Shown here in pieces: positions 14,595 through 35,986 of a stretch of 64,000 nt of DNA. Position 1 is the first letter of the stretch; every line of letters starts with the position of its first letter. Both the position numbers and the translations under genes were made by a program. The stretch covers positions 62,001 through 126,000 of IMG/VR virus record IMGVR_UViG_3300037042_006844, one strand, 5' to 3'. Below the pieces are notes generated by a model. It was not told the origin of the DNA. It saw only the letters and a list, made by a program, of their open reading frames with translations, and did no database searches.

Positions 14595-14668
14595 TGGCAG
14601 GGGATGAAGGAATCGAACCTTCACTAGTTGATCCAAAGTCAACTGCACTACCATTATGCAAATCCCCA
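14595..14668 (-). tRNA. tRNA-Gln(TTG)
   Basis: cloverleaf, CCA. Confidence 0.9.
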
Positions 14669-14681
14669 GTTCTAAAAAAAT

Positions 14682-14755
14682 TGGTGCGGGATGAGAGAAT
14701 TGAACTCTCCACTCAACATTGGCAATGTCGTGTTATACCGATTAACTAATCCCGC
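14682..14755 (-). tRNA. tRNA-Gly(GCC)
   Basis: cloverleaf, CCA. Confidence 0.9.
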
Positions 14756-14759
14756 ACTA

Positions 14760-14847
14760 TGGAGTGTTGTGTAGGAATCGAACCTACTCCGTGTTTTACC
14801 ACATCCGTTTTGCAGACGGCTGACTTCCCATTCGTCATCAACAACAC
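14760..14847 (-). tRNA. tRNA-Cys(GCA) with long variable arm
   Basis: ctGCAaa loop, U73, extra arm TGTGGTAAAACACG. Confidence 0.8.
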
Positions 14848-14871
14848 AAATTAAACACACCAAACTAAAAA

Positions 14872-14947
14872 TGGTGGACCTGACAGGGATCGAACCTGCT
14901 ACATTCTGCTTGCAAAGCAGACGCTCTCCCAAATGAGCTACAAGCCC
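14872..14947 (-). tRNA. tRNA-Ala(TGC)
   Basis: cloverleaf, G3.U70, CCA. Confidence 0.92.
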
Positions 14948-14953
14948 AGAAAA

Positions 14954-15047
14954 TGGCGGAAGCGAAGGGTGCTGCCCCCTTAGTCGTTTTTTAGACGACG
15001 GCAGTTTAGCAAACTGCTGTGAAAACCTAACTATTCACGTCACTTCC
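14954..15047 (-). tRNA. tRNA-Ser(GCT)
   Basis: long arm, G73, atypical T loop. Confidence 0.8.
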
Positions 15048-15053
15048 AAAAAA

Positions 15054-15143
15054 TGGCGGTATACAGAGGACTCCAACCCCAGCCCCTTGCGGGACCAATC
15101 TGATTTCGAATCAGTTCTAGCACGACTGTCTAGTTTATATACC
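15054..15143 (-). tRNA. tRNA-Ser(CGA)
   Basis: long arm, G73, CCA. Confidence 0.8.
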
Positions 15144-15171
15144 AAAAATGGCGGATGAGCCATGCTCCATA

Positions 15172-15678
15172 TTAAATTTTCTTTTCTACCGTATAACCGT
15201 TGTGTATAAGAACCTCTTTACACAATTTTATAAAATCTTCTACTAACAAATCGCCTTTTGCCATATTAGCTTCTTTACAAGCCAACCCTAAATTTGTTAT
15301 TTCACATCCACCATTTTTCGACACAGGAATAATATGGTCACAATTATAGGTTTTTGGTTCTAATAAGTCAATCTTTCTTCCTGTTAAGTAACATACAGGA
15401 GTTTCTAACACTTTCTCTTTGAATTCTTTTGAAGAAAAGACTAGATCGGCTCTTTTTCCTTTACAATTTCTATTTCCATTTATAAAACTAAAATTGTCTT
15501 TTTTCCTTTTAAGAATTCCATTTAGAGTTTTTTTATAACTCTTAAATCTAATTTTTGACTTTTCTTTTTGTCCTATACCGCAATGATATGCTATAGTTCC
15601 TTTAGAACAACCTAAAAGTTTTCGTATTTCAGCATACGATCTGCCTTCACTTCTCAATCTTAATATGTTTTCTTTCAT
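15172..15678 (-). CDS. HNH homing endonuclease with N-terminal HTH
   Basis: GRSYAEIRKLLGCSKGTI; CYLTG...DHIIPVSKNG..EITNLGLACKEANMAK. Confidence 0.85.
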   Translation of the reverse strand: MKENILRLRSEGRSYAEIRKLLGCSKGTIAYHCGIGQKEKSKIRFKSYKKTLNGILKRKKDNFSFINGNRNCKGKRADLVFSSKEFKEKVLETPVCYLTGRKIDLLEPKTYNCDHIIPVSKNGGCEITNLGLACKEANMAKGDLLVEDFIKLCKEVLIHNGYTVEKKI

Positions 15679-15750
15679 ACTAATACATATGAAAGAGTTC
15701 GAATAAAAATCAATAAAAATATTCGAACCAGTATTTTTATTTTCAAAGAG

Positions 15751-15838
15751 CGGAAGCCAAGGGAATCGAACCCCTGCCGCCTTTCGACGGTTTAGTTTTC
15801 AAGACTAACGCAGCAAACCAACATCTGACCTGACTTCC
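15751..15838 (-). tRNA. tRNA-Ser(TGA), no encoded CCA
   Basis: long arm, ctTGAaa, 3' end abuts HNH cassette. Confidence 0.85.
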
Positions 15839-15844
15839 GTAAAT

Positions 15845-15919
15845 TGGTGGAGCCTAGCGGTTACGCTCCGCTGACCTCGCATTGCAAGTGCGATGTGTTA
15901 CTATTAGCACCAAGACCCC
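15845..15919 (-). tRNA. tRNA-Ala(TGC)
   Basis: G3.U70, atypical T loop AGCGTAA. Confidence 0.8.
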
Positions 15920-15928
15920 ATTAAACTG

Positions 15929-16005
15929 TGGTGCGAACGATGGGAGTCGAACCCATACTGTAGAAATTTTAAGTTTCTTGTCTCCTTCCGTTGGACTACG
16001 TTCGC
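15929..16005 (-). tRNA. tRNA-Leu(TAA), short variable loop
   Basis: cloverleaf, CCA. Confidence 0.88.
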
Positions 16006-16011
16006 AAAAAT

Positions 16012-16089
16012 TGGTAGCATCGACTGGATTCGAACCAGCACTGTTTTCATTTTGAGTGAAACGCCTCCTTCCAATTGGGCTACGATGCC
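16012..16089 (-). tRNA. tRNA-Leu(CAA), short variable loop
   Basis: cloverleaf, CCA. Confidence 0.88.
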
Positions 16090-16092
16090 ATT

Positions 16093-16337
16093 ATGAACTA
16101 CCCACCCGCTAAAGCAAGTGGGTTTCCCCGTTGCTCTAACATTAGGGTTTCTATAGGGTAGTTCCTACCCTTTACAAACTCTGTTTTTGGAAATGAGAAG
16201 TCCAAGATATTCTTGGCCGCATTCACATCTCTATCGTGATTTGTGTTACAATTGAGAAAGTATCAAACTATTGTCAATGGGTCGCATTCATCCCAAACCC
16301 TATAGGGAATTGGGTTTTCTGCTCCCACAAAGATAAA
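16093..16337 (-). mobile_element. internally deleted IS200/IS605 element (TnpB C-terminal remnant plus both ends)
   Basis: Reads NCNTNHDRDVNAAKNIL; right end hairpin ...GGGTAGTTCAT; left end TTTAT..TGGGAGCAGAAAA. Confidence 0.8.
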
Positions 16338-16351
16338 TTACAAAAAAATCG

Positions 16352-16912
16352 TCAAAACTTTTCGAGTGTGATTACGTCCAGCCCATTTTTCCATGCGTTT
16401 AGGTAATTCTCACTTTTTTGTTTGTTCCGCATATCCCACACGGTTGTTGCACCTACGCACGGATCAATCAACTCAAGCAAACTTGGAGTCCAAGTCGGAT
16501 CAACGATGTCTTCAAGAACTAAAATACCACCAGATTTAACTTTTGGCAAGTAGTTTTTCAAAAAGAACACCATCGACTCATATGAATGAGGACCGTCGTC
16601 TATCACTATATCAAAAAAATTGTTCTGAAACAAATTCGCGGATTCAATCGTGTATCCGTCTCTTTGCATAAACGTAATTCGACTTTTGTCTACGAAATTA
16701 CAATCGTTTATGTCCATCCCATATATTTGGGCATTTGTAAAAAAATCTCTCCATGTTGTGATCGATCCGCCGCTTCCGACTCCCAACTCTAGCACGTTTG
16801 CTGTGGAGTGTTGTCTAGGAGAAAAGAGTTTATCATAAAACTCGTCATAATATCCTAAAACTTCTTTGTCGGTTCGCGGTCCTATTTGAATTGAAAACTC
16901 TTTGAATGTCAT
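16352..16912 (-). CDS. class I SAM methyltransferase (TDK...VLELGV...IDDGPH family)
   Basis: LELGVGSG, YGMDI, IDDGPH, GGILVLED. Confidence 0.85.
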   Translation of the reverse strand: MTFKEFSIQIGPRTDKEVLGYYDEFYDKLFSPRQHSTANVLELGVGSGGSITTWRDFFTNAQIYGMDINDCNFVDKSRITFMQRDGYTIESANLFQNNFFDIVIDDGPHSYESMVFFLKNYLPKVKSGGILVLEDIVDPTWTPSLLELIDPCVGATTVWDMRNKQKSENYLNAWKNGLDVITLEKF

Positions 16913-16949
16913 ATGTTCAACAATACATAGATCGTCAATAACTAAAAAG

Positions 16950-17027
16950 TGGTGGCACCGACAGGATTTGAACCCGCACATTTTCCGGTCTAAACGGAAC
17001 GTCTCCTTCCAGTTGGACTACAGTGCC
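16950..17027 (-). tRNA. tRNA-Leu(TAG), short variable loop
   Basis: cloverleaf, CCA. Confidence 0.88.
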
Positions 17028-17039
17028 TCTAGTAAAAAA

Positions 17040-17117
17040 TGGTGGTGATGACTGGATTCGAACCAGCACTGTTTACCTCCTCAAGGTAACGCCTCCTTCC
17101 AATTGGGCTACATCACC
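17040..17117 (-). tRNA. tRNA-Leu(GAG), short variable loop
   Basis: cloverleaf, CCA. Confidence 0.88.
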
Positions 17118-17127
17118 GATCTTAAAA

Positions 17128-17205
17128 TGGTCCACCCGCACAGATTTGAACTGTGGTTATTCTTGCTCCCAGGGCAAGTGCCATACCAGGCTAGGCGACG
17201 GATGG
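17128..17205 (-). tRNA. tRNA-Pro(TGG)
   Basis: cloverleaf, CCA. Confidence 0.85.
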
Positions 17206-17211
17206 AATAAA

Positions 17212-17285
17212 TGGTAGGCAGTAGTGGAGTCGAACCACTCATTTACGGATGTAAACCGAACGTTATACCGATTAACTAACCGCCC
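17212..17285 (-). tRNA. tRNA-Val(TAC)
   Basis: cloverleaf, CCA. Confidence 0.88.
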
Positions 17286-17319: not shown

Positions 17320-17420
17320 TTTACCGCCATATGGGTTCTGCTTTCGGCATATCACCCAGTGACCGATCAAGTGTTTTGCTTTTCAGCGGGGACACCAGAG
17401 AGAGTTTCAACCCCAACCAC
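17320..17420 (-). ncRNA. conserved structured leader of tRNA array 1
   Basis: Shares TTGAAACTC and TTGATnGGTC..TGGGTG.TATGCCGAAAGCAGAACCCATA with 35568-35685. Confidence 0.6.
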
Positions 17421-17426: not shown

Positions 17427-17454
17427 ATCTTACCATATCTCACCAACTTGTCAA
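17427..17454 (-). promoter_or_regulatory. sigma70-type promoter of tRNA array 1
   Basis: TTGACA-16 bp-TAAGAT. Confidence 0.75.
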
Positions 17455-17479
17455 CAGGCTTTTTGCAAAACATTTCAAC

Positions 17480-17614
17480 AAAAAAACCGTTGGTCATTTT
17501 AAGACCAACGGTTACTTGAGAATGTTCGGGAAAAAGCAACCATCAGCCTCAGGTCAAACTAGGTTGACCCGCGAGCACTAACAAGGATGATTGCAGACTG
17601 TTTTTCATGTTCAT
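17480..17614 (-). promoter_or_regulatory. leader-peptide attenuator 1 (MNMKNSLQSSLLVLAGQPSLT*)
   Basis: ORF 17614-17549; 15-bp antiterminator 17548-17534 with 17517-17503; terminator 17513-17480. Confidence 0.8.
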
Positions 17615-17723
17615 TAATACATATAACGAAAATTTGAAAAACGTTAAAAATTTCTGTATTTACACAACAAAAAACCGTTGGATTGCTCCAACGGTCGCGG
17701 AAATGGATTGATAATCTATTATC

Positions 17724-22916: not shown

Positions 22917-22954
22917 CAAAAAAAGCAACAAACTAAGTTTGTTGCTTCTTAAAT

Positions 22955-23029
22955 TGGCTGGCACTGTAGGACTTGCACCTACAATCTCTCGGTTCAGAGC
23001 CGATTGCGATTCTATTACGCTAAGTGCCA
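22955..23029 (-). tRNA. tRNA-Gln(CTG)
   Basis: cloverleaf, CCA. Confidence 0.82.
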
Positions 23030-23031
23030 AT

Positions 23032-23105
23032 TGGAGCCTAATACTGGAATCGAACCAGTGTTTGATCATTACGAGTGAACTGTTTTACCACTAAACTAAT
23101 CAGGC
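23032..23105 (-). tRNA. tRNA-Thr(CGT)
   Basis: cloverleaf, CCA. Confidence 0.88.
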
Positions 23106-23139
23106 ATAAATGTATTCTCTGACAGATTTTTTCAAAAAA

Positions 23140-24611: not shown

Positions 24612-24643
24612 ATGGCAATAAATAGACCACGCTCAAACGTAAA

Positions 24644-28426: not shown

Positions 28427-28504
28427 TGGCGGACACGGCAGGACTTGAACCTGCGACAAATCGCTTCGTAGGCGATTGCTCTAATCCAACTGAGCTACGT
28501 GTCC
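28427..28504 (-). tRNA. tRNA-Arg(ACG)
   Basis: cloverleaf, CCA. Confidence 0.92.
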
Positions 28505-28511
28505 GAAAAAA

Positions 28512-28589
28512 TGGTAACTCTGGTAGGGATCGAACCTACATTATCCAATTATGCGCTATCCGGATAGAAGCCGGTGCCATTACAGAGTC
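28512..28589 (-). tRNA. D-armless tRNA-Arg(TCT)-like RNA
   Basis: Same architecture as 23332-23410. Confidence 0.65.
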
Positions 28590-28598
28590 ATTGTAAAT

Positions 28599-28674
28599 TG
28601 GTTGCCCCAGTTGGCTTTGCTCCAACCACCTTCGCCTTATCAAGACGCTGCTCTACTAAATGAGCTATGGGGCA
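28599..28674 (-). tRNA. tRNA-Ile(GAT)
   Basis: cloverleaf, atypical T loop. Confidence 0.8.
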
Positions 28675-28683
28675 GTTATAAAT

Positions 28684-28758
28684 TGGCGGGCATAACGAGA
28701 ATCAAACTCGCCTTGTTCGATAGACAGTCGAACCGATGACTCAGCCTCTTCTATGCCC
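28684..28758 (-). tRNA. tRNA-Asp(GTC)
   Basis: ctGTCta, G73, weak D arm. Confidence 0.72.
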
Positions 28759-28860
28759 ATATTATGTATTTGATCTTTTGCCACGGAAGCTTTTCACACC
28801 GTGAATATTGCATCAAACACATAACAAAATTGGATTTTTCAAAGGATTTCACGTTTAACG

Positions 28861-28937
28861 TTCCTGTGATGGGATTTGAACCCACATCTATGCCCCACAC
28901 TGGGGTTGCTCTGTCTCTGCAATTGAGCTACACACGT
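28861..28937 (-). pseudogene. tRNA-like sequence, 5-nt anticodon loop, no CCA
   Basis: Good D and T arms, broken acceptor. Confidence 0.45.
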
Positions 28938-29012
28938 CTATCTTCTGAGTATAAATCACCAGTCATGAGCCGGTGCAAACCTCTTTGGTCAGCTTAACCA
29001 AATAACTTAAAT

Positions 29013-29088
29013 TGGGGTGATATATGGGTGCTGCCCCCATTCCTTCGGCTTCACAAGCCAAAATACTAGCTGGTATACGAATATCACC
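29013..29088 (-). tRNA. tRNA-His(GTG)
   Basis: G-1:C73, atypical T loop. Confidence 0.8.
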
Positions 29089-29110
29089 ATTGCTAAAACT
29101 GTCTTAAAAC

Positions 29111-29461
29111 TTATCGGTCATCCCGAATGTCTGGCATATCCACATCAACGGGTTCGCCAGAACTTGGATCGGGTTCGTTGTCAAGGAACGGTTGGATGCG
29201 ACTCCAATATTTATCTGACAACTTGCCGTAACCATGTCTCCACGCCATGCTTCTGGCGAGGTCTTCAATGGTTTCGTCCTTCCATCCGCGTTCTTGGCGC
29301 GTCTGCCAGAGTTGCTTTATAGTATTAGCAAGCTCTTCGTCGCTCATATAGGACAACCGTTGTTTGTGTTTAATTACGCTGCTTGGCATTCCGCCTTCGG
29401 CAACGTTTTCGTTCAGACGAAATACATTACCACCAGTTTTTTGATATAGTTTTTGGCTCAT
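29111..29461 (-). CDS. hypothetical protein
   Basis: TATTTATA motif before ATG. Confidence 0.6.
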   Translation of the reverse strand: MSQKLYQKTGGNVFRLNENVAEGGMPSSVIKHKQRLSYMSDEELANTIKQLWQTRQERGWKDETIEDLARSMAWRHGYGKLSDKYWSRIQPFLDNEPDPSSGEPVDVDMPDIRDDR

Positions 29462-29515
29462 ATAACATATAAATATGTTTGAACCTCATTAAAAAACAAA
29501 AATCACAAAAATCAA

Positions 29516-29725
29516 TCAAGATTGATCAGATTTTGAAATTTTCTTCGCATGAACTTCTCGATGTATCTTTGGCGTTATCCAAACTCGCCCAGCGAGATGG
29601 TCCGGCCAAACGGACACAGAGTAATATTTGTTATCGGGGATGTCGCACCATTTGCGTAGTTGAGCATCCATTCCGAGCGGATCAGCAACATAAGCGGCGT
29701 ATTGTTGTGCTGTTAATGTTTTCAT
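29516..29725 (-). CDS. hypothetical protein
   Basis: small ORF within array. Confidence 0.45.
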   Translation of the reverse strand: MKTLTAQQYAAYVADPLGMDAQLRKWCDIPDNKYYSVSVWPDHLAGRVWITPKIHREVHAKKISKSDQS

Positions 29726-29889
29726 AAATTGGTGCTGTGCTCTCCACGCCGTCACTCTGTTTTACCGAATTTACCGGTCGGCAGTCATTTATGGGGTCAG
29801 TTACCCATTAGTTATTCAGGAGTTGCACCCGAGTATATTACGACTTTCACGTAAGCACTACTACATGTGTTACTTTGATAACTAAAAAA

Positions 29890-29967
29890 TGGTGGACCGG
29901 GTGGGATTTGAACCCACAACATATCGGGTAAGAGCCGATTACTCTAATCCAGTTGAGCTACCGATCC
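29890..29967 (-). tRNA. tRNA-Lys(CTT)
   Basis: cloverleaf, CCA. Confidence 0.9.
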
Positions 29968-29985
29968 ATTGTAATTGTTGTAAAG

Positions 29986-30058
29986 TGGTCCTCCCATCTG
30001 GACTTGAACCAGAACACTGCGCTAATCAGGCACAGGGACTGCATTATCGTATAGGAGG
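29986..30058 (-). tRNA. atypical tRNA-Ile(GAT)
   Basis: acceptor/T/anticodon arms present, unpaired D region. Confidence 0.6.
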
Positions 30059-30064
30059 ATAAAT

Positions 30065-30191
30065 TGGTGCAAGTGGTGGGTAATGCTCCCACACGAATCG
30101 TCTGGTTAAAAGCCAGTTGCCCGAAAAGCCAGTTGCCCGAAAAGCCAGTTGCCCGAAAAGCCAGTTGCCCGTCTATTGTGGCTTCACTTGC
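30065..30191 (-). tRNA. tRNA-Lys(TTT) interrupted by internal 16-bp x4 tandem repeat
   Basis: Removing 3 copies restores cloverleaf with ctTTTaa. Confidence 0.65.
30108..30171. repeat. tandem repeat AAAAGCCAGTTGCCCG x4
   Basis: exact copies. Confidence 0.95.
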
Positions 30192-30240
30192 GTAAATCTT
30201 CGATATGTCAATGACCTAAAATCATCTTAGCAGACTTTTT

Positions 30241-30645
30241 TCAAACGTCAACAACCTTTTTTCTAACACAGTTCATCACGTTTCTAGCACGTTTGGACGG
30301 AGATGGAAACATGAACGGTCTGCTTTTACCGTTTACATACGGTGGGGTTTTTCCAACGCTTGTGTATTGCGCTGCTGTTATGTCAATTATTTTGCCATCA
30401 ATATTTTGCAGCCACCAATGACTGATGTTGTTACTATCTTTGGCTTGAAACGGTTTGAATGTTTCGATCAACTGAAATTCTTTCATTAAACAATACAACG
30501 CTTCGGTTGCAACATAGCAATGACCATACATTGGATTGCCAGCATTTGTTTTGCGATATTCGGGCTTCAATAACTTGGGATGCAAACAGCTTGTTATGGC
30601 ATCGACCAACTGTATAACTTTTGAGTTTGTAGTAGTGTCTATCAC
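30241..30645 (-). CDS. hypothetical protein with GHCY...HWWL..D motif (papain/transglutaminase-like triad)
   Basis: motif spacing. Confidence 0.55.
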   Translation of the reverse strand: MIDTTTNSKVIQLVDAITSCLHPKLLKPEYRKTNAGNPMYGHCYVATEALYCLMKEFQLIETFKPFQAKDSNNISHWWLQNIDGKIIDITAAQYTSVGKTPPYVNGKSRPFMFPSPSKRARNVMNCVRKKVVDV

Positions 30646-30768
30646 AATAATACATATGATAGACTACCGCGAAATCATTCACCGTCCCGTGACACCACAG
30701 GTCCATAGATATACTCCGATTCATCTATGTTAAACTTGAGCAATATCAAGCACGATTACTACTAAAAC

Positions 30769-30842
30769 TGGTGGCAATGGCGGGACTTGAACCCACAACT
30801 TGTGCAGTTATCAACGCACTACTCTAATTGAGTTACATCGCC
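30769..30842 (-). tRNA. tRNA-Ile(GAT)
   Basis: cloverleaf, bulged anticodon stem. Confidence 0.72.
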
Positions 30843-30848
30843 AAAAAA

Positions 30849-30926
30849 TGGTGGTTCTGACAGGATTCGAACCTGCACTACCTAGCTTCTGAGACTAGTG
30901 CCTCCTTCCAATTGGGCTACAGAACC
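30849..30926 (-). tRNA. tRNA-Leu(CAG), short variable loop
   Basis: cloverleaf, CCA. Confidence 0.88.
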
Positions 30927-31146
30927 AAAAATGTTTACTGGATTTCACATTGTTCCATTACATTATTTTTCATCACGTTCATGAAAATTAATACAACGTC
31001 TATCAGTGTCCATACGGTTATTACATCGCAGTGTTCGCACTATACATCATGGAATCGCACCATGTCCTCCCAGCGTATTGGCTGCTGTGCTACTATTACA
31101 CCAATGTATAACAACACTTTGCGCCTTCATCCGTATGTTAAAAAAA

Positions 31147-31238
31147 TGGTGGTGGAGGTGAGATTCGCACTCACATTGTTTACCACAAGGGTATGGGTTT
31201 TACAGACCCACGCTTTCAACTATTCAGACCACTCCACC
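31147..31238 (-). tRNA. tRNA-Tyr(GTA)
   Basis: long arm, CCA. Confidence 0.82.
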
Positions 31239-31243
31239 ACAAA

Positions 31244-31789
31244 CTAGCTAAAATTGTATTCTAAAATTTTCTCAATGGCTACTATTCCTTTGTCGTTAAT
31301 CTCTCTGGTTCCAACACCAGCAAAATTTTCGGTCAATTTTGGAATATAGTCAATGACTTCAAATTCTCCCAATGCATAGTTGAATTTGTTCCATTTATTA
31401 CCCTCTTGGTCAAAAACAAATGTAGGTTTCTGATTGTCAATAGCCATTTGAACCGCCCAACCAGTGCCACCACTGACCTTTTTCTTATCTAAAAATTTAC
31501 CTACAGCGAATATGGATTCGGCATTTTTGACTTGAAACCAATTTCTTGCTAACAAGTTCTGAATATACCGGGCTTGTCCTTGTGGATAACGTTTCATTGC
31601 TTTATTGGCAATTAAAACGTGTTCAAATCCTTCATTTAGTTGTTCGGCGGATAAGATTTCTCTGTTCTGGCCTTCTTGTTTATGACCACCAAAAGAATAA
31701 GCGATGGTTTTAACGCCATATTTATTGCCTTCGTTTTCCCATTCCATATCGGCTCCGGGACAGCCGCCACTATGACAAATATAACTCAT
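31244..31789 (-). CDS. SLOG-superfamily (DprA/MoCo-carrier-like) Rossmannoid protein
   Basis: HSGGCPGAD, RN, GGTGWA, FAGVGTRE. Confidence 0.7.
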   Translation of the reverse strand: MSYICHSGGCPGADMEWENEGNKYGVKTIAYSFGGHKQEGQNREILSAEQLNEGFEHVLIANKAMKRYPQGQARYIQNLLARNWFQVKNAESIFAVGKFLDKKKVSGGTGWAVQMAIDNQKPTFVFDQEGNKWNKFNYALGEFEVIDYIPKLTENFAGVGTREINDKGIVAIEKILEYNFS

Positions 31790-31811
31790 AACTATTCAAA
31801 ATTATCAACAT

Positions 31812-32336
31812 TTAATTATACCGAGATGGAGGTGGAGCATCAGCTTCACCAGCAGCTACAAGATCCATGTATTTTTTATAATATTTTTCATGATCTGGCA
31901 ATTCTTTCACACCTTTCCAATCGTGGGGAAGCGATTCTTTTTTGAAAGGAAGTGCTTGCCGTCTATCTTTCATTACGAATACGTCGTATGGATAGTCCAC
32001 ATATTCAAACATCGAAAGATTCTCGTGTATTACGCTTATATTTTTATCAATTACGCCTCTTAAATGGGCAGTTATGATGTATTTTCGCCCGTAATACCCA
32101 GCAGCGATTTTATCGTCAGTAAAAAATATTTCCCCTTTGCTTTGAAATGTAGGACGACCGTGTGTTCCTGGAGTTTTTAATCCAAAATGAAATAACGGAA
32201 AGTTCTTATTGGTTCCGTGATAGAACAATTTTGGAGCACCATTACCATCCAATAGAATTGGATACTCTATCTCATCGAATTGCGCTTCTTCTTCCGTCAT
32301 TAATCGGAACGTATTTATGTCGGTTCGTTTGAACAT
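31812..32336 (-). CDS. ADP-ribosyltransferase-like protein
   Basis: LFYHGT...IFFTDDK.AAGYY. Confidence 0.55.
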   Translation of the reverse strand: MFKRTDINTFRLMTEEEAQFDEIEYPILLDGNGAPKLFYHGTNKNFPLFHFGLKTPGTHGRPTFQSKGEIFFTDDKIAAGYYGRKYIITAHLRGVIDKNISVIHENLSMFEYVDYPYDVFVMKDRRQALPFKKESLPHDWKGVKELPDHEKYYKKYMDLVAAGEADAPPPSRYN

Positions 32337-32375
32337 GTCTATAAATATTTGCAAACTGAACTATAATCTAAAAAT

Positions 32376-32450
32376 TGGCCCGATAGGTTGGTAACGCTCC
32401 AACATCCTCCGTTCTTCAGACGGATGCTAATCGATTTCAGCTACTATCGG
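32376..32450 (-). tRNA. tRNA-Phe(GAA)
   Basis: cloverleaf, atypical T loop. Confidence 0.78.
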
Positions 32451-32458
32451 ATAAAAAA

Positions 32459-32534
32459 TGGCCCGGCAGATTGGTAACTCTCCAATATCCTTCGCTCGCA
32501 AGAGCGAATACTCTTATATTTAAGCTACTACCGG
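32459..32534 (-). tRNA. tRNA-like RNA with non-canonical anticodon arm
   Basis: Body paralogous to adjacent tRNA-Phe; arm TTCGCTC-TTGC-GAGCGAA; CCA intact. Confidence 0.55.
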
Positions 32535-32542
32535 ATAAAAAA

Positions 32543-32620
32543 TGGTGGACGTAGAGGGATTCGAACCCTCAACTTCTAGGTTATACACCAATTACTCTAA
32601 TCCAATTGAGTTATACGTCC
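32543..32620 (-). tRNA. tRNA-Ile(TAT)
   Basis: cloverleaf, loop tgTATaa. Confidence 0.7.
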
Positions 32621-32624
32621 AATA

Positions 32625-32699
32625 TGGGGTGATATGCGGGTTACGATCCCGCACAAACAGTTCCACAAACTGTTATGCTACCACTACATCAATATCACC
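32625..32699 (-). tRNA. tRNA-His(GTG)
   Basis: G-1:C73, CCA. Confidence 0.82.
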
Positions 32700-32791
32700 A
32701 TTACTATATCTAGAATCGTTGGAGCACTGTGTAGGAATCGAACCGACATACATCTTTCGATTGCTACACTACATTTGTAGTGCATTGCCAA

Positions 32792-33037
32792 TTATCTATA
32801 GTTTATATCACTAAAATCTGACTCTTCAACGCGGTCACTCGTATCAACTAACTCTGCTACTCTCATCCAATTTTTGCAATCGTAGTTTCCACATAAAAGA
32901 GAATAGTCACTCAGAGCACTGTCTGATCCTTGATATGCTTTCATTTTCTCTCCACAGTCTGGACACCGCATATCAAACCACTCACACCGCCCTCTACTTT
33001 CTATTTCATCCCGTGTAATATTTTTCATATTTTTCAT
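32792..33037 (-). CDS. small Zn-ribbon hypothetical protein
   Basis: CPDC...CGNYDC. Confidence 0.45.
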   Translation of the reverse strand: MKNMKNITRDEIESRGRCEWFDMRCPDCGEKMKAYQGSDSALSDYSLLCGNYDCKNWMRVAELVDTSDRVEESDFSDINYR

Positions 33038-33046
33038 AACTAAAAT

Positions 33047-33135
33047 TGGTGGTAGTGACAGGATTCGAACCTGTAAGTTTAGCCAGTGGCAATGCGTTTA
33101 CAGCGCATCTCCTTCGCCAATTTGGATACACTACC
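33047..33135 (-). tRNA. tRNA-Tyr(GTA)
   Basis: long arm, CCA. Confidence 0.9.
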
Positions 33136-33167
33136 ATTACCCTCAAAGCGTGATGCTTTGAGGAAAG

Positions 33168-33255
33168 CTCTAGGAGTTGGACTTGAACCAACGACGGGGT
33201 TATTCACCCTACAGATTAACAGTCTGTTGCCTGCTACCAACTCGGCTACCCTAGA
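33168..33255 (-). tRNA. tRNA-Asn(GTT) with long variable arm, no CCA
   Basis: ctGTTaa, G73, extra arm GGGTGAATAACCC. Confidence 0.78.
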
Positions 33256-33273
33256 ATTAAACTACACTAAAAA

Positions 33274-33347
33274 TGGCTCCCGAAGATGGACTCGCACCAC
33301 CACAAACTGGGTAACAGCCAGCCGTGCTACTTTGACACTACTCGGGA
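33274..33347 (-). tRNA. tRNA-Asn(GTT)
   Basis: cloverleaf, CCA. Confidence 0.82.
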
Positions 33348-33367
33348 ATACTACTACTAGTATAAAA

Positions 33368-33443
33368 TGGCCCTCCATGCGAGACTCGCACTCGCTACTG
33401 CATCGTGACAGGATGCTATGATAAACTCATTCAACAATGAAGG
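33368..33443 (-). tRNA. tRNA-Asp(GTC)
   Basis: ctGTCac, G73. Confidence 0.75.
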
Positions 33444-33590
33444 GTAACTACTAAAATTGTTCCACGTTATTTGGCAAGAAGGTGGACAAACTTACCCGTG
33501 ACGTTCTCGCTCTCTGGGTCTCGTCATGCGCTTGGACTTTGAATTTAAGGGTTATTCCAAGTAACCTGTGTTTCCTTAGCTTTCGGAAAT

Positions 33591-33667
33591 TGGAGCATCG
33601 TGTGGGTAACGCTCCCACTCAGTATCTTGTTTGGAAGACAAGTGCCTCACTTCTCAGCCAACGATGC
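33591..33667 (-). tRNA. tRNA-Gly(TCC)
   Basis: cloverleaf, U73. Confidence 0.8.
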
Positions 33668-33677
33668 GTTTATAAAA

Positions 33678-33753
33678 TGGCATCCACCATAGGAATCGAA
33701 CCTACCCACTGAGATTTGGAGTCTCTGTCGCCAGCCTTGGAACATGGGTGGAT
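33678..33753 (-). tRNA. tRNA-Trp(CCA)
   Basis: ctCCAaa, G73. Confidence 0.8.
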
Positions 33754-33764
33754 ATATCATAAAT

Positions 33765-33840
33765 TGGTGGTCCAGTAGGGAGTTAAACCCTAAATTCAAC
33801 GTTCGTAATGTTGTGTGATATTCAGTTTCACCACCGGACC
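33765..33840 (-). tRNA. tRNA-Arg(ACG)
   Basis: cloverleaf, CCA. Confidence 0.78.
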
Positions 33841-33845
33841 GTAAA

Positions 33846-33920
33846 TGGTAGTCTATGTGGGTGCTGCCCCCACGTTTCCAGTTTGAAAAACTAGCGAACT
33901 AGCTGATGTTCGAATAGACC
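33846..33920 (-). tRNA. tRNA-Glu(TTC)
   Basis: cloverleaf, atypical T loop. Confidence 0.78.
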
Positions 33921-33929
33921 ATTGTAAAT

Positions 33930-34006
33930 TGGAAACCCCACTTGGATTCACACCAAGGTTTCTGGCTCAGAGCACACAGAAGTCCTAATCACTAGACGAT
34001 AGGGTT
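33930..34006 (-). tRNA. Glu-like tRNA body with expanded 12-nt anticodon loop
   Basis: TTCTG-TGTGCTCTGAGC-CAGAA; acceptor and CCA intact. Confidence 0.5.
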
Positions 34007-34010
34007 AAAT

Positions 34011-34086
34011 TGGCAACCTCACTCGGAGTCGAACCGAGTTCCCCGGACTGAGAATCCAGAATCCTTTCCTATTAGACGATGAGGTC
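34011..34086 (-). tRNA. tRNA-Glu(CTC)
   Basis: cloverleaf, CCA. Confidence 0.9.
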
Positions 34087-34095
34087 GTTGTAAAT

Positions 34096-34187
34096 TGGAG
34101 CCTCCAGTCAGACTCGAACTGACAAAGGATGATTAATCCATTCTTGATTACAAATCAAGGCCGATAACCAATTCCGGGCATGGAGGC
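34096..34187 (-). tRNA. tRNA-Thr(TGT) with long variable arm
   Basis: ttTGTaa, extra arm GGATTAATCATCC. Confidence 0.8.
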
Positions 34188-34253
34188 AGTAAATTTTCTA
34201 TACTTTATTTATGGAAATTACCTCAGTAATTCCGTCATCGCCCTATGTATATA

Positions 34254-34853
34254 TTATTTCTTAATCACGCAAGTAAGGCTTGCGTTAAGATGAAATGTTC
34301 CATCACGATTGTAGTGATGCCGTTCACGAAATTCGCTGCGAATTGCATTCAATGCAGCATCTTGCGAATCGAGATCGTTTGCGAGAAAATCATAAGTAGT
34401 TGGCAGTCTGTCAACATACTCTGATCCCGCAGCAAAAGATGTGTGTAAATCCTCCATCACAAAATATCCATTGGGCTTAACTTTTGGCCAATAATATTTC
34501 AACGCATCTTGCTGATGTGACATGTAATGACTTCCGTCATCCATCATGATATCAATCTCGCCATCTGCAAACGTGCTGTAAACTTCTTCCAGCAAAGCGT
34601 TTTTCGTAATGTAAACAAAACGATCATGTAACGGAACCTCTGGACGATAGCCGCAATCAATTCCGTAGATGGTTGCGTTTGGAAAATATTCCAACCATGT
34701 TTGAGTGCTCGCCCCAAAATAAACACCGATTTCAACTACTTTTCGAACGTCATATCGAATCGGTCCAAAAAACTGCTCGTAAAAATCCATGTATCTGTGA
34801 CCCCAGGCTTTATCAGTCTGGTATTTTATTCCAATGTCTTGTAGTAATCCCAT
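34254..34853 (-). CDS. class I SAM methyltransferase
   Basis: TDK..H.Y, VEIGV, DDGSH, MEDL. Confidence 0.85.
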   Translation of the reverse strand: MGLLQDIGIKYQTDKAWGHRYMDFYEQFFGPIRYDVRKVVEIGVYFGASTQTWLEYFPNATIYGIDCGYRPEVPLHDRFVYITKNALLEEVYSTFADGEIDIMMDDGSHYMSHQQDALKYYWPKVKPNGYFVMEDLHTSFAAGSEYVDRLPTTYDFLANDLDSQDAALNAIRSEFRERHHYNRDGTFHLNASLTCVIKK

Positions 34854-34884
34854 ATACTATTAAATAGTGTCATTTGAAATTAAA

Positions 34885-35529
34885 CTATAGTTTTTCAATC
34901 ACACAAGTAATACTGCTCGGATAGTGGAACGTTCCGTCACGATTATAAAAATGTTTTGCACCAAACTCCGTGTCACGGATGTTGTTCAACTCAGCGTCTT
35001 GCGTAACGGCATTGTTTTTCAAAAAATCATAAGTGGTTGGTAATCGATCTCGATTTGCGAGCAGCCTTCGCTGTGAAGGTGGCAGACAACTTTCGGAATC
35101 TGCTCGTATGGCGGATGTGGATAAATCTTCCATCACAAAATAGCCGCCATGTTTGATCTTTGACCAGTAAAATTTAATTGCGTCGTGCTGATGTGATATT
35201 TTATGACTACCATCATCAATCAGAATATCGATGTCATTATCGGTGAATGAAGAATAAACTTCTTCCAGCAAAGCGTTTTTCGTAACGTAAACAAATCTGT
35301 CATGTGGAGAAACTAATTCGCAGTGTATGCAATCGATTCCATAAATCGTGGCGTTTGGAAAATAATCCAACCACACTCTGATACTGGAACCACGATGCAC
35401 ACCAATCTCAATAACTTTGCGGACATCAAACCGTATCGGACCAAAAAATTGTTCATAGAAATCCATGTATTTGTGATACGTGGCTTTGTCAGTTTGATAT
35501 TGCATTCCTAAATCGTGAAGTAAACCCAT
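34885..35529 (-). CDS. class I SAM methyltransferase (tandem paralog)
   Basis: Highly similar to 34254-34853. Confidence 0.85.
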   Translation of the reverse strand: MGLLHDLGMQYQTDKATYHKYMDFYEQFFGPIRFDVRKVIEIGVHRGSSIRVWLDYFPNATIYGIDCIHCELVSPHDRFVYVTKNALLEEVYSSFTDNDIDILIDDGSHKISHQHDAIKFYWSKIKHGGYFVMEDLSTSAIRADSESCLPPSQRRLLANRDRLPTTYDFLKNNAVTQDAELNNIRDTEFGAKHFYNRDGTFHYPSSITCVIEKL

Positions 35530-35567
35530 GCTGTATACATATACAGAAAATAGCGATCTCAACCGCA

Positions 35568-35685
35568 CTTTCATCGCCCTATGGGTTCTGCTTTCGGCAT
35601 AACACCCACGGACCAATCAATTGATTTTCCCAGACTTTACCTTTTTCACTGGCGGCGGCTCAACAGATGGAGTTTCAAGCCCGTT
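35568..35685 (-). ncRNA. conserved structured leader of tRNA array 2
   Basis: Second copy of 17320-17420 element. Confidence 0.6.
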
Positions 35686-35701
35686 TCTAAATTGTTCTTA
35701 C

Positions 35702-35821
35702 AGTCTATCAGCTTTTTATCACTTGTCAACTGTCTTTTTTCGCTCACCTTTCGGCTCGCTCGTTGGTCAACCTTTCGTCGCTCAACTATAATAATCTTAT
35801 CACACTTCCTATCACTGTCAA
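35702..35821 (-). promoter_or_regulatory. tandem sigma70 promoters of tRNA array 2
   Basis: TTGACA-16-TAAGAT (35821-35794) and TTGACA-16-TAGACT (35729-35702). Confidence 0.7.
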
Positions 35822-35846
35822 CGATCTTCTTTCAAAAAAATTCCAA

Positions 35847-35986
35847 CAAAAAACCGTCACTCATTTCTGGGTGACGGTTGATATTCTTTCTTCAGTTATG
35901 TATACAAAATATCAGCGTCCACCCTTTCTTGTAAAGGTGGTATTATACCAATCACGCTTAATGTCATGTTTACAAACGACTTGCAT
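35847..35986 (-). promoter_or_regulatory. leader-peptide attenuator 2 (MQVVCKHDIKRDWYNTTFTRKGGR*)
   Basis: ORF 35986-35912; protector hairpin, antiterminator over stop codon, terminator AACCGTCAC/GTGACGGTT + U tract. Confidence 0.8.

What the first reader, a model, noticed from the sequence alone, without database searches (positions are those of the whole stretch)
14595..35986. Codon-matched leader-peptide attenuators controlling two phage tRNA arrays: a candidate tRNA-depletion sensing system
Seen: each array is preceded by a tiny ORF plus mutually exclusive antiterminator/terminator. Leader 1 after MNMKN uses only S,L,Q,V,A,G,P,T, and array 1 encodes Ser x3, Leu x4, Ala x2, Gln, Val, Gly, Pro, Cys. 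Leader 2 contains Q,K,H,D,I,R,W,Y,N,T,F,G (plus V,C) and no S/L/A/P. Array 2 encodes Gln, Lys, His, Asp, Ile, Arg, Trp, Tyr, Asn, Thr, Phe, Gly, plus Glu and one Leu. The two leaders are nearly complementary in composition, as are the arrays. Known: trp/his-type attenuation, and host anticodon nucleases (e.g. PrrC, PARIS AriB) that deplete tRNAs and are countered by phage tRNAs. Inference: ribosome stalling on any codon whose tRNA is cut or uncharged allows read-through into the array supplying that tRNA. I know of no description of this in phages.
Basis: partly seen in the sequence, partly recalled or inferred. Interest (0 to 1): 0.95.

Follow-up and report, generated by a model that had tools for sequence, protein, structure and literature searches.

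The report
Leader-peptide attenuators before phage tRNA arrays
In a family of uncultivated giant phages, each of two tRNA gene arrays is preceded by a tiny translated reading frame and a switchable terminator, and each frame is built almost only from the amino acids whose tRNAs lie in the array behind it, which looks like a way for the virus to measure its tRNA supply.

Summary
The window comes from a 303-kb uncultivated phage. Upstream of each tRNA array lies the same module: a promoter-like motif, a short ORF without a 5' leader, an intrinsic terminator, conserved sigma70-like promoter(s), a new pseudoknotted RNA, and then the tRNAs.

About 170 related loci from viral and metagenome contigs carry the module. 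They give 20 distinct type-1 and 24 distinct type-2 leader peptides.
- **Type-1 cores:** 254 of 272 residues are V, P, L, A, S, G or Q. Type-1 arrays encode almost only those tRNAs.
- **Type-2 cores:** 381 of 392 residues are T, H, R, E, W, N, Y, I, F, K, D or C. Type-2 arrays match these.
- **Off-set residues** sit at the ends of the peptides.

Folding shows a segment at or next to the stop codon pairing with the terminator's 5' arm. The pairing forms when a ribosome is modelled stalled inside the ORF and is lost when the ribosome reaches the stop codon.

Three parts of the reading are not supported or not tested. Matching of synonymous codons is no better than random. The window has one tRNA-Ser, not three. 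The attenuator cannot be the only control, because conserved promoters lie downstream of it. The trigger (tRNA depletion) is inferred. I found no prior description.

The parts
17616..17625 (-). Promoter-like -10 motif (TATATGTATT) 7 nt before the leader-1 start codon
   Evidence: A TATATATT-type motif lies 5-10 nt before the ATG in all leader loci. The same motif sits directly before other genes in the window. Function as a promoter is inferred.
17549..17608 (-). Leader-1 ORF, 19 codons plus stop (alternative in-frame ATG at 17614)
   Evidence: Homologous ORFs occur in all type-1 loci. Of its 18 residues after Met, 15 are in {V,P,L,A,S,G,Q}, and all 7 of those amino acids are present.
17586..17594 (-). 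Segment 1 (inside the ORF), pairs with segment 2 in the full-length fold
   Evidence: Minimum-energy fold of the full leader. Each type-1 clade has an equivalent pairing built from different sequence.
17534..17550 (-). Segment 2, the 5' strand of the antiterminator; begins inside the stop codon
   Evidence: Forms a 17-bp helix with 17517..17501 in the transcript cut before the terminator's 3' arm. With a ribosome modelled stalled mid-ORF, pairing of the terminator arm is worth -12.4 kcal/mol against -3.9 +/- 2.1 for shuffles.
17501..17517 (-). Segment 3, overlapping the terminator's 5' arm
17479..17513 (-). Intrinsic terminator 1 (11-bp stem, 7-nt loop, U-tract)
17427..17454 (-). Sigma70-like promoter (TTGACA, 16 nt, TAAGAT, with TG) downstream of terminator 1
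   Evidence: Present in every locus read.
17321..17414 (-). Pseudoknotted RNA element, copy 1
14595..17285 (-). tRNA array 1, in transcription order: Val, Pro, Leu(gag), Leu(tag), [methyltransferase gene], Leu(caa), Leu(taa), Ala, Ser(tga), [HNH endonuclease gene], Ala, long-arm 'Cys(gca)', Gly(gcc), Gln(ttg)
14111..14136 (-). Terminator-like hairpin after array 1
35990..36001 (-). Promoter-like motif (GATATATATTTG) before leader 2
35912..35986 (-). Leader-2 ORF, 24 codons plus stop
   Evidence: Of its 23 residues after Met, 18 are in {T,H,R,E,W,N,Y,I,F,K,D,C}, and 11 of those 12 amino acids are present. There are 24 distinct homologues.
35919..35940 (-). Conserved hairpin inside the leader-2 ORF
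   Evidence: The equivalent hairpin in relatives shows compensatory changes.
35906..35924 (-). Segment 2 of leader 2 (last codons, stop codon and the next bases)
   Evidence: -10.2 kcal/mol against -3.4 +/- 2.0 for shuffles.
35869..35889 (-). Segment 3 of leader 2, overlapping the terminator's 5' arm
   Evidence: In relatives 93.8% of cells are paired, against 19-62% when the partner is slid.
35847..35879 (-). Intrinsic terminator 2
35702..35821 (-). Two sigma70-like promoters (35821..35794 and 35729..35702) with short GNRA hairpins between them
35571..35682 (-). Pseudoknotted RNA element, copy 2 (longer P2 hairpin)
34254..35529 (-). Two paralogous FtsJ-like/Methyltransf_24 methyltransferase genes between the element and array 2
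28427..34187 (-). Proximal part of array 2, the part that leader 2 could plausibly feed: Thr, Glu, Arg, Trp, Gly(tcc), Asp, Asn x2, Tyr, His, Ile, Phe, Tyr, Leu(cag), Ile, Lys, Ile, Arg(tct)-like, Arg, with small genes between
   Evidence: A convergent + strand radical-SAM gene ends at 28408.
22920..24720 (-). Distal tRNAs (Arg cct, Arg tcg-like, Thr ggt, Thr cgt, Gln ctg) and the terminator 22950..22920; probably a separate transcription unit

Best explanation
Each module is a ribosome-mediated transcription attenuator of the trp/his type, but it sits in front of tRNA genes rather than biosynthetic genes.

**Proposed sequence of events**
1. A promoter whose -10 element lies only 5-10 nt before the ATG makes a leaderless or nearly leaderless transcript. 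This transcript encodes a 17-28 codon peptide.
2. The core codons of type-1 leaders specify Ser, Gln, Pro, Ala, Leu, Gly and Val. Those of type-2 leaders specify Tyr, Thr, His, Ile, Lys, Arg, Trp, Asp, Asn, Phe, Cys and Glu. These are the amino acids served by the array behind each leader.
3. If all these codons are decoded quickly, the ribosome reaches the stop codon and covers segment 2. The terminator then forms and the transcript ends.
4. If the ribosome is held at any core codon because a charged cognate tRNA is short, segment 1 is masked and segment 2 is free. Segment 2 pairs with the terminator's 5' arm, and RNA polymerase reads through into the array.
5. Without any ribosome, segments 1 and 2 pair first and the terminator forms.

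The read-through adds to a basal supply from the conserved sigma70-like promoters downstream. The result is a per-class feedback loop: a shortage of decoding capacity for one class of amino acids raises transcription of the tRNA array for that class.

**Shown here:** the anatomy, its conservation, the composition match, and the competing pairings in silico.

**Inferred:** translation of the ORFs, stalling, read-through, and the cause of the shortage (a host anticodon nuclease, host tRNA loss after shut-off, or phage codon demand).
For: - **Conserved module.** It is found in 46 viral and more than 80 metagenome loci, with exactly two copies per genome.
- **Sampling by leader sequence.** Searching with leader sequence instead of the RNA element still finds the matching array downstream. 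This held for 27 type-1 and 8 type-2 stretches.
- **Near-clean tRNA partition.** Over 53 type-1 and 25 type-2 distinct loci, type-1 arrays hold 392 tRNAs for V, P, L, A, S, G, Q against 7 others. Type-2 arrays hold 188 for T, H, R, E, W, N, Y, I, F, K, D, C against 4 others.
- **Leader cores.** 254 of 272 (type 1) and 381 of 392 (type 2) residues are in the own set, while the flanks are mixed.
- **Correlation with tRNA gene counts.** Spearman r for core residue counts is +0.69 and +0.83 against the own array, and -0.75 and -0.72 against the other array.
- **Chance and composition controls.** Joint probabilities run from 1e-6 to 1e-3 per leader.
- **Substitutions stay in set.** 19 of 22 in type 2 (expected fraction 0.64, P = 0.018) and 12 of 15 in type 1 (expected 0.44, P = 0.0045).
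- **In-frame indels.** Indels inside the ORFs are multiples of three, while those after the stop codon are not.
- **Antiterminator pairing.** With a ribosome stalled mid-ORF, pairing of the terminator's 5' arm is worth -10 to -17 kcal/mol, against -3 to -6 for shuffles. z is -3 to -6.6 in all type-2 and most type-1 leaders.
- **Ribosome position.** The arm is paired with probability 0.6-1.0 for stalls at core codons. This falls to 0.01-0.4 when the ribosome is at the last codons or the stop.
- **Full-length folds** give segment 1:2 plus the terminator.
- **Three type-1 clades** build the same three pairings from different sequences.
- **L014/L059.** A G-to-A change in segment 3 is compensated in both partners, segment 4 and segment 2 (read).
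- **Off-set residues** lie where the model says stalling cannot signal: positions 2-4 and the last codons.
- **Missing Shine-Dalgarno is not an objection.** Only 2 of 42 long ORFs in this phage have one.
- **Natural variants** carry the type-1 core as the C-terminal tail of a longer upstream ORF, so a ribosome does pass through it.
Against: - Conserved near-consensus promoters lie between attenuator and array, so the arrays do not depend on read-through.
- One locus (L121) lacks the leader altogether.
- There is no synonymous-codon matching beyond amino-acid identity.
- Some arrays, such as L024, lack detectable tRNAs for His, Tyr, Asp and Glu although their leader keeps those codons.
- Many main-clade type-1 leaders have no Val codon although tRNA-Val is the first gene of every type-1 array.
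- Covariation support for the antiterminator is modest, because its sequence hardly varies.
- Some main-clade type-1 antiterminators are weak, for example L009 and L047 at -5.4 to -6.5 kcal/mol with z about -0.4.
- An equilibrium measure without a ribosome does not separate real leaders from shuffles.
- In the window, 1.3 kb of methyltransferase genes separate leader 2 from the first tRNA.
- There are no transcript, ribosome or experimental data of any kind.
Confidence: 0.65

Rival explanations
1. The hairpin is only an insulating terminator that ends the upstream operon in front of a strong tRNA promoter. The small ORF is then incidental, or encodes a peptide with its own function, and the arrays are transcribed only from the sigma70-like promoters.
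For: - Conserved consensus-like promoters lie directly after every terminator.
- In many loci the upstream gene has no terminator of its own.
- L121 has a plain terminator, promoter, element and array, with no leader.
- There is no codon-level matching.
Against: This reading does not explain several findings.
- Two complementary amino-acid sets track the two array types across clades whose peptide sequences differ.
- Substitutions stay within the set.
- Off-set residues are confined to the ends of the peptides.
- The stop codon always abuts a segment that is complementary to the terminator's 5' arm.
- An ORF-internal segment pairs with that same segment in every clade.
Confidence: 0.15
2. The attenuator is real, but its output is not tRNA supply. 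On this reading the terminated leader transcript (about 110-140 nt) or its peptide acts in trans, as rnTrpL/peTrpL do in Sinorhizobium. Alternatively, read-through serves to interfere with the downstream promoter.
For: Attenuator-derived sRNAs and leader peptides with trans functions are documented (PMC7968998 and PMC7298713, listed). The type-2 peptide core is strongly conserved in sequence, not only in composition.
Against: Type-1 peptides differ greatly in sequence between clades while keeping their composition. That argues against a specific peptide or sRNA target. Interference would lower tRNA output exactly when decoding is slow, which makes no regulatory sense.
Confidence: 0.08
3. Translation-independent sensing. 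On this reading the row of codons in the leader RNA binds the anticodons of the array's tRNAs directly, like a multi-specifier T-box, and that binding sets the terminator/antiterminator choice.
For: A run of codons is by definition complementary to the anticodons of the matching tRNAs. T-box leaders do sense tRNA directly (general knowledge).
Against: - There is no T-box or any other Rfam match, even at E up to 10.
- There is no Stem-I-like scaffold.
- A conserved ATG, an open frame, in-frame indels and the placement of the stop codon all point to translation.
- The lack of synonymous-codon matching to the anticodons argues against direct pairing even more than it argues against decoding.
Confidence: 0.03

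Closest known systems
Leader-peptide transcription attenuators of enterobacterial amino-acid operons (trpL, hisL, leuL, pheL; theory in PMC1183508)
   Same: - A short ORF lies upstream of the regulated genes.
- An intrinsic terminator follows it.
- Three competing pairings (1:2, 2:3, 3:4) are present.
- The stop codon lies next to segment 2, with about 60-80 nt from the stop to the U-tract.
- The regulatory codons are cognate to what the operon supplies.
   Different: - The regulated genes are tRNAs, not biosynthetic enzymes.
- The leader holds one or a few codons for each of 7 or 12 amino acids instead of a run for one.
- The transcript appears to have no 5' leader, and there is no Shine-Dalgarno sequence.
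- A strong promoter follows the attenuator.
- There is no sequence or Rfam relationship.
Multivalent attenuators (thr operon: Thr + Ile; ilvGMEDA: Leu + Val + Ile) and the pheST attenuator
   Same: One leader senses several amino acids. In pheST a gene of the translation apparatus is under leader-peptide control (general knowledge).
   Different: Known cases sense two or three amino acids, whereas these sense 7 and 12. Here two complementary leaders in one genome together sample 19 amino acids. The product is the tRNA itself.
Leaderless polycysteine sORF attenuators of mycobacteria (bioRxiv 10.1101/834739, listed)
   Same: A leaderless short ORF whose translation reports on the supply of its amino acid and controls downstream genes.
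   Different: That case involves a single amino acid, cellular genes and a different mechanism for the downstream effect. It has no link to tRNA genes.
T-box riboswitches
   Same: They read tRNA status and choose between a terminator and an antiterminator upstream of translation-related genes.
   Different: T-boxes bind one uncharged tRNA directly, without a ribosome, and have Stem I and the T-box bulge. None of that is present here, and there is no Rfam hit.
Phage tRNAs as counter-defence (T5 tRNA against PARIS, PMC11464382; mycobacteriophage tRNAs, PMC10264068; AriB specificity, PMC12409363)
   Same: This is the biological setting: host systems cut tRNAs and phage tRNAs replace them. The window also holds an Rnl1-like RNA ligase, a tmRNA and tRNA-associated methyltransferases.
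   Different: Those papers, as far as the searches show, describe no regulation of the phage tRNA genes by decoding status.
Cis-acting processive antitermination RNAs (HK022 put, Bacillus EAR): comparison for the pseudoknotted element only
   Same: A compact structured RNA about 100-125 nt long, directly downstream of a promoter, at the head of a long and largely untranslated operon (general knowledge).
   Different: There is no sequence or structure similarity and no Rfam hit. The function is entirely untested.

Membership tests
Ribosome-mediated (leader-peptide) transcription attenuator | Short ORF upstream of, and on the same strand as, the regulated genes | tested here: met
   ORFs of 17-28 codons occur in the window and in about 170 related loci.
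Ribosome-mediated (leader-peptide) transcription attenuator | Regulatory codons specify the amino acid(s) whose supply the regulated genes serve | tested here: met
   Met at the amino-acid level. Core residues are 254/272 and 381/392 in the own set, and the arrays are partitioned the same way.
   Randomising synonymous codons gives P = 0.07-0.99 across 26 leaders. This is not a defining feature of the classical family, but it was claimed.
Ribosome-mediated (leader-peptide) transcription attenuator | Intrinsic terminator between the ORF and the regulated genes | tested here: met
   98-100% of cells are paired in relatives, with compensatory changes.
Ribosome-mediated (leader-peptide) transcription attenuator | Antiterminator that uses the terminator's 5' arm and is blocked by a ribosome at the stop codon | tested here: met
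   Met in silico only. Complementarity is conserved (93.8% of cells paired), but covariation is scarce.
Ribosome-mediated (leader-peptide) transcription attenuator | Anti-antiterminator (segment 1:2) overlapping the ORF | tested here: inconclusive
   It is present in the full-length minimum-energy folds of every clade. It is invariant in the main type-1 clade and only 77% paired in type 2.
Ribosome-mediated (leader-peptide) transcription attenuator | Regulated genes depend on transcription that passes the attenuator (no promoter in between) | tested here: not met
   Sigma70-like promoters lie after each terminator in every locus read.
Ribosome-mediated (leader-peptide) transcription attenuator | Read-through rises when the cognate charged tRNA is limiting, and requires translation of the ORF | not testable with these tools
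   Needs reporter or in vitro assays.
Rfam leader families (Trp, His, Leu, Thr, Phe leaders) and T-box (RF00230) | Covariance-model match | tested here: not met
   No such hit at gathering score or at E up to 10.
Processive antitermination RNA (put/EAR-like): for the pseudoknotted element | Structured RNA immediately downstream of the promoter of a long operon | tested here: met
   The element begins a few nt after the predicted start site. Its structure has 11 pairs with compensatory changes, and 0 of 500 shuffles reach its score.
Processive antitermination RNA (put/EAR-like): for the pseudoknotted element | Makes RNA polymerase resistant to downstream terminators | not testable with these tools

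The most novel reading that the evidence does not exclude
A virus carries a two-channel sensor of decoding capacity. Two complementary leaderless leader peptides together sample 19 of the 20 amino acids. Each gates read-through into the tRNA array that serves its own half, so the phage tops up the class of tRNAs that has become limiting, for example after a host anticodon nuclease fires. This would be the first leader-peptide attenuator known to control tRNA genes. It comes with a previously undescribed pseudoknotted RNA at the head of each array, which may keep RNA polymerase processive through the untranslated array.
Probability: 0.5. Interest if true: 0.92.

Novelty: new variant of a known kind. 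Interest (0 to 1): 0.86.

Why it matters
Why phages carry tRNA genes has been argued for fifty years. The candidates are codon compensation, replacement of host tRNAs lost after shut-off, and escape from tRNA-cutting defence systems. A built-in sensor that couples tRNA gene transcription to how fast particular codons are decoded would show that the phage treats tRNA supply as a regulated quantity.

It would also make the question testable. One could ask which shortages open which attenuator.

For RNA biology it would extend leader-peptide attenuation in two ways. The regulated product would be the tRNA itself, and a single leader would read many amino acids at once. The two complementary leaders would also be compact, portable reporters of decoding capacity by amino-acid class. 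The pseudoknotted RNA element is a new structured RNA family in its own right.

Tried and rejected
- **Rfam.** At gathering score and at E up to 10, nothing but tRNAs and tmRNA matched. No leader family, T-box or riboswitch hit the leaders or the element.
- **Cultured relatives.** Megablast and blastn of the region and tblastn of a large neighbouring protein against 50,697 phage records gave no match. The RNA ligase is at most 48% identical to cyanophage ligases.
- **Bacterial genomes.** The element is absent from 185,579 genomes. The one homologue of the neighbouring outer-membrane-like protein lies on a 4.7-kb scaffold of a Bacteroidota MAG with no leader beside it. The host stays unknown.
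- **Is the RNA element a small protein gene?** An open frame exists in some copies but is broken by 1-nt and 19-nt indels, while the base pairs covary. This was rejected.
- **Codon-level matching.** Rejected.
- **First antiterminator test.** This measured the ensemble energy gained by pairing the terminator arm with no ribosome present. It did not separate real leaders from shuffles, because segments 1 and 2 compete almost isoenergetically. It was replaced by the stalled-ribosome version.
- **Base composition as the cause of the amino-acid bias.** Rejected with nucleotide-shuffled ORFs.
- **A third copy of the module.** The covariance model finds exactly two per genome. The tRNA-Lys(ttt) cluster at 48.5 kb has a different upstream repeat.
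- **Literature.** Seven searches for leader peptides or attenuators with phage tRNA genes found no description. The library lacks most subscription journals.

Full report
**Source and layout.** The window is bases 62,001-126,000 of IMGVR_UViG_3300037042_006844, a 303,564-bp uncultivated phage contig. All 33 tRNA and tmRNA genes found by ARAGORN lie on the - strand, so upstream means higher coordinates. Rfam finds only tRNAs and a tmRNA at gathering score.

Reading the - strand upstream of the first tRNA of each array shows the same order of parts twice:
1. an A/T-rich TATATATT-like motif;
2. an ATG 5-10 nt later that opens a short ORF;
3. a hairpin region;
4. an intrinsic terminator;
5. one or two near-consensus sigma70-type promoters;
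6. a 95-115-nt sequence that the two sites share, including an identical 22-mer (0 expected by chance);
7. the genes.

Module 1 leads straight into tRNA-Val at 17285. Module 2 leads into two paralogous FtsJ-like methyltransferase genes and then tRNA-Thr at 34187.

**tRNA content.**
- Array 1 holds Val, Pro, Leu x4, Ala x2 (one with a degenerate T-arm), one Ser(tga), Gly(gcc) and Gln(ttg).
- It also holds a tRNA that ARAGORN calls Cys(gca). This tRNA has a Ser-type long variable arm and sits where relatives have Ser(gct).
- A convergent + strand B12/radical-SAM gene ends at 28408, 19 nt from tRNA-Arg on the other strand. Leader 2 can plausibly feed only the stretch 35529..28427. The five distal tRNAs (24720..22955) are probably a separate unit.

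**Relatives.**
- Homologues of the outer-membrane-like gene upstream of leader 1 brought in six viral contigs. Every one has a small ORF, terminator and promoter before a Val-Pro-Leu... array.
These are mostly freshwater, with some marine.
- The pattern was absent from 185,579 bacterial genomes.
- The pattern comes in two sizes, and genomes covered well enough have one of each. A covariance model finds exactly two copies per genome.
- Searching instead with the leader sequences recovered the same association. That search included three contigs in which a different sequence replaces the shared RNA.

**The composition match.** The loci give 20 distinct type-1 and 24 distinct type-2 leader peptides.
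- *Type-1 examples:* the window's MKNSLQSSLLVLAGQPSLT, MKNQSVQSSVVAGQSSPALLPSLS and MNSVSQPSQASQLPSGS. The sequences differ but the composition is the same.
- *Type-2 examples:* the window's MQVVCKHDIKRDWYNTTFTRKGGR and MRVHYTNIKRWDTFTNCECVDGDIV.
- *Core residues.* The type-1 core runs from position 5 to the last residue but one. In it, 254 residues are in {V,P,L,A,S,G,Q}, 17 are in the other set and 1 is Met. The type-2 core runs from position 4 to the seventh residue from the end. In it, 381 residues are in {T,H,R,E,W,N,Y,I,F,K,D,C} and 11 are in the other set. The flanks are mixed.
- *Arrays.* Over 53 type-1 and 25 type-2 distinct loci the arrays divide the same way. There are only 7 and 4 tRNAs on the 'wrong' side.
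- *Correlation.* Core residue counts correlate with tRNA gene counts of the own array (Spearman 0.69 and 0.83). They correlate negatively with the other array (-0.75 and -0.72).
- *Coverage.* The two core sets together cover all 19 non-Met amino acids.

**Controls for chance.**
- Against the phage's own amino-acid usage, the joint probability of the observed purity and coverage is 2.4e-4 (window leader 1) and 1.3e-3 (window leader 2). For relatives it is 1e-6 (L006), 1.5e-5 (main type 1) and 1.1e-4 (main type 2).
- Nucleotide-shuffled ORFs rule out base composition as the cause.
- No other sORF in the window reaches leader 1's purity.
- Alternative residues seen in core columns stay in the own set more often than single-base neighbours predict. 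The counts are 19 of 22 (P = 0.018) and 12 of 15 (P = 0.0045).
- Indels within the ORFs are multiples of three. Those after the stop codon are not.

**What does not match.**
- With the amino acids held fixed, the synonymous codons are not decoded by the array's anticodons better than random synonymous codons.
- Some arrays lack detectable tRNAs for residues their leader keeps.
- Many main-clade type-1 leaders have no Val codon.
- The match is therefore to amino-acid identity at family level, not to the anticodons of each array.

**RNA structure.**
- The leader regions fold much better than shuffles (z = -3.7 and -4.1).
- In transcripts cut just before the terminator's 3' arm, a segment that begins in or just after the stop codon (type 1), or spans the last five codons (type 2), pairs with the terminator's 5' arm. 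In window leader 1 this is a 17-bp helix.
- In full-length RNA the best fold is an ORF-internal segment paired with that same segment, plus the terminator. This is the classical 1:2 / 2:3 / 3:4 layout.
- I modelled a ribosome as covering -14 to +15 around the P site and blocking pairs across it. The terminator arm is then paired with probability 0.6-1.0 for stalls at core codons, and 0.01-0.4 at the last codons or the stop.
- With a mid-ORF stall, pairing of the arm is worth -10 to -17 kcal/mol against -3 to -6 for shuffled upstream sequence. A few main-clade type-1 members are weaker.
- The positions where stalling cannot signal are the positions that carry the off-set residues.
- Pair counts on alignments: terminator plus inner hairpin, 98.8% of cells paired with compensatory changes, and 0 of 500 shuffles reach it. 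Type-2 antiterminator, 93.8% paired against 19-62% for slid partners, but with little covariation because the sequence is nearly invariant. Segment 1:2 in type 2 is only 77% paired.
- The three type-1 clades build all three pairings from different sequences.
- In L014/L059 a G-to-A change in segment 3 is matched by C-to-T in both of its alternative partners (read).

**Translation signals.**
- The leaders have no Shine-Dalgarno sequence, but neither do the phage's genes. Only 2 of 42 long ORFs have one, against 7% in random sequence.
- Many genes have a TATTTAT/TATATAT-type motif 4-10 nt before the ATG.
- In the main clades the leader motif forms a plausible -10 element, with TTG-type -35 elements 17-18 nt upstream.
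- I infer leaderless or near-leaderless leader mRNAs. Leaderless sORF attenuators have a precedent in mycobacteria (bioRxiv 10.1101/834739, listed).
- A recurrent natural variant has the type-1 core as the C-terminal tail of a longer upstream ORF.

**The downstream promoters and the RNA element.**
- Every locus read has TTGACA-type promoters after the terminator. L121 has these but no leader. The attenuator cannot be the sole source of array transcription, and I read it as an inducible addition to a basal supply.
- The shared sequence after the promoters is a structured RNA. It has a 4-bp P1 and a 9-bp helix that forms a pseudoknot with it, a variable hairpin, and a long interrupted helix. Across 21 sequences, 94% of cells are paired, 11 pairs show compensatory changes, and 0 of 500 shuffles reach its score.
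- It is not in Rfam.
- It is not coding, because frame-breaking indels occur while the pairs covary.
- Its position directly after the start site and 30-60 nt before the first tRNA, with no terminator or ribosome site after it, argues against a riboswitch. It fits a cis-acting element for processivity, protection from Rho, or 5' processing. This is a guess.

**Mechanism, and which steps are shown.**
- *Shown:* the anatomy, its conservation, the composition match and its statistics, and the competing pairings in silico.
- *Inferred:* that the ORFs are translated; that slow decoding of a core codon holds the ribosome where segment 2 is free to sequester the terminator arm; and that read-through raises tRNA output.
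- *The natural cause of slow decoding is open.* Amino-acid starvation is an unlikely purpose, since more tRNA does not help. A shortage of the tRNAs themselves fits better. Candidate causes are host anticodon nucleases (PMC11464382, PMC10264068, PMC12409363), host tRNA decay after shut-off, and phage codon demand.
- The neighbourhood suits a genome invested in tRNA integrity. It holds an Rnl1-like RNA ligase (PHROG E = 1.4e-86), a tmRNA, and methyltransferases inside the arrays.

**Comparison with known systems, and novelty.**
- It works like a trp/his-type attenuator and meets most structural criteria of that class.
- It fails the criterion that no promoter lies between the attenuator and the regulated genes. 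It has no sequence relationship to the known leader families.
- It is not a T-box.
- It differs from every described case I know of, or could find in seven literature searches, in three ways. It regulates tRNA genes. One leader reads 7 or 12 amino acids. Two complementary leaders in one genome match two complementary arrays.
- I file it as a new variant of a known kind.

Noticed in passing
window 17321-17414 and 35571-35682 (- strand); alignment A4, model R1: A pseudoknotted RNA of about 95-115 nt, absent from Rfam, lies directly after the sigma70-like promoters and just before the arrays. There are exactly two copies per genome. Eleven base pairs show compensatory changes. Its function is unknown; it may be a processivity or 5'-processing element.
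   Followed up: partly
L010:5840-5975, L176:3695-3830, L177 (same region): Three contigs have the normal type-1 leader, terminator and promoter, but a different conserved sequence of about 130 nt in place of the pseudoknotted element, again directly before tRNA-Val. It has no Rfam hit.
   Followed up: partly
window 48630-48930 (- strand): A tandem duplication lies upstream of tRNA-Lys(ttt). Each unit is a TTGACA-17-TATACT promoter plus a sequence of about 95 nt. This may be another RNA element, of a different kind from the two modules.
   Followed up: no
window 14760-14844 (- strand): A tRNA with anticodon GCA (Cys) has a Ser-type long variable arm. It sits where relatives carry Ser(gct), one base away in the anticodon. 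It could be a Ser-charged tRNA that reads Cys codons, an anticodon variant that escapes a nuclease, or a decaying gene.
   Followed up: partly
window 30769-30842; L030, L031, L037, L014 ('ctct'): tRNA genes predicted with 8-nt anticodon loops (four-base anticodons gata or ctct) recur at a conserved place in type-2 arrays. This is the form of +1 frameshift-suppressor tRNAs.
   Followed up: no
window 28515-28589 and 23335-23410 (- strand): Two paralogous, weakly scoring tRNA-like genes have Arg anticodons (tct, tcg), a poor or missing D-arm and a long extra region.
   Followed up: no
window 35529-34885, 34853-34254, 16981-16352 (- strand), 22371-22916 (+): Four Methyltransf_24/FtsJ-like methyltransferase genes are embedded in or next to the tRNA arrays. 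They are candidates for tRNA or rRNA modification enzymes.
   Followed up: partly
window 15172-15678 (- strand): An HNH endonuclease with an HTH domain lies inside array 1, at the place where relatives have further Ser tRNAs. It may be a homing element that displaced them.
   Followed up: no
window 39895-40914 (- strand); 10191-10571 (- strand): An Rnl1-like RNA ligase (PHROG 968, E = 1.4e-86; best phage relatives are cyanophage ligases at 44-48% identity) and a phage tmRNA. Together with the arrays these form a tRNA/translation-maintenance region.
   Followed up: partly
window 27029-28408 and 25458-26228 (+ strand); 24722-25600, 26231-26998 (- strand); 31812-32354 (- strand): B12-binding radical-SAM and radical-SAM genes, two family-2 glycosyltransferases and a weak ADP-ribosyltransferase-like ORF are interspersed with the array-2 tRNAs.
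   Followed up: no
L034, L040, L058, L109, L144, L164, L168: A recurrent variant has the type-1 leader core as the in-frame C-terminal tail of a longer upstream ORF with VTVSEP-like repeats. The terminator, promoter and array behind it are unchanged.
   Followed up: partly
whole window: Shine-Dalgarno motifs are essentially absent (2 of 42 long ORFs). Many genes have a TATTTAT/TATATAT-type motif 4-10 nt before the ATG, which suggests widespread leaderless or very short-leader mRNAs in this phage.
   Followed up: partly
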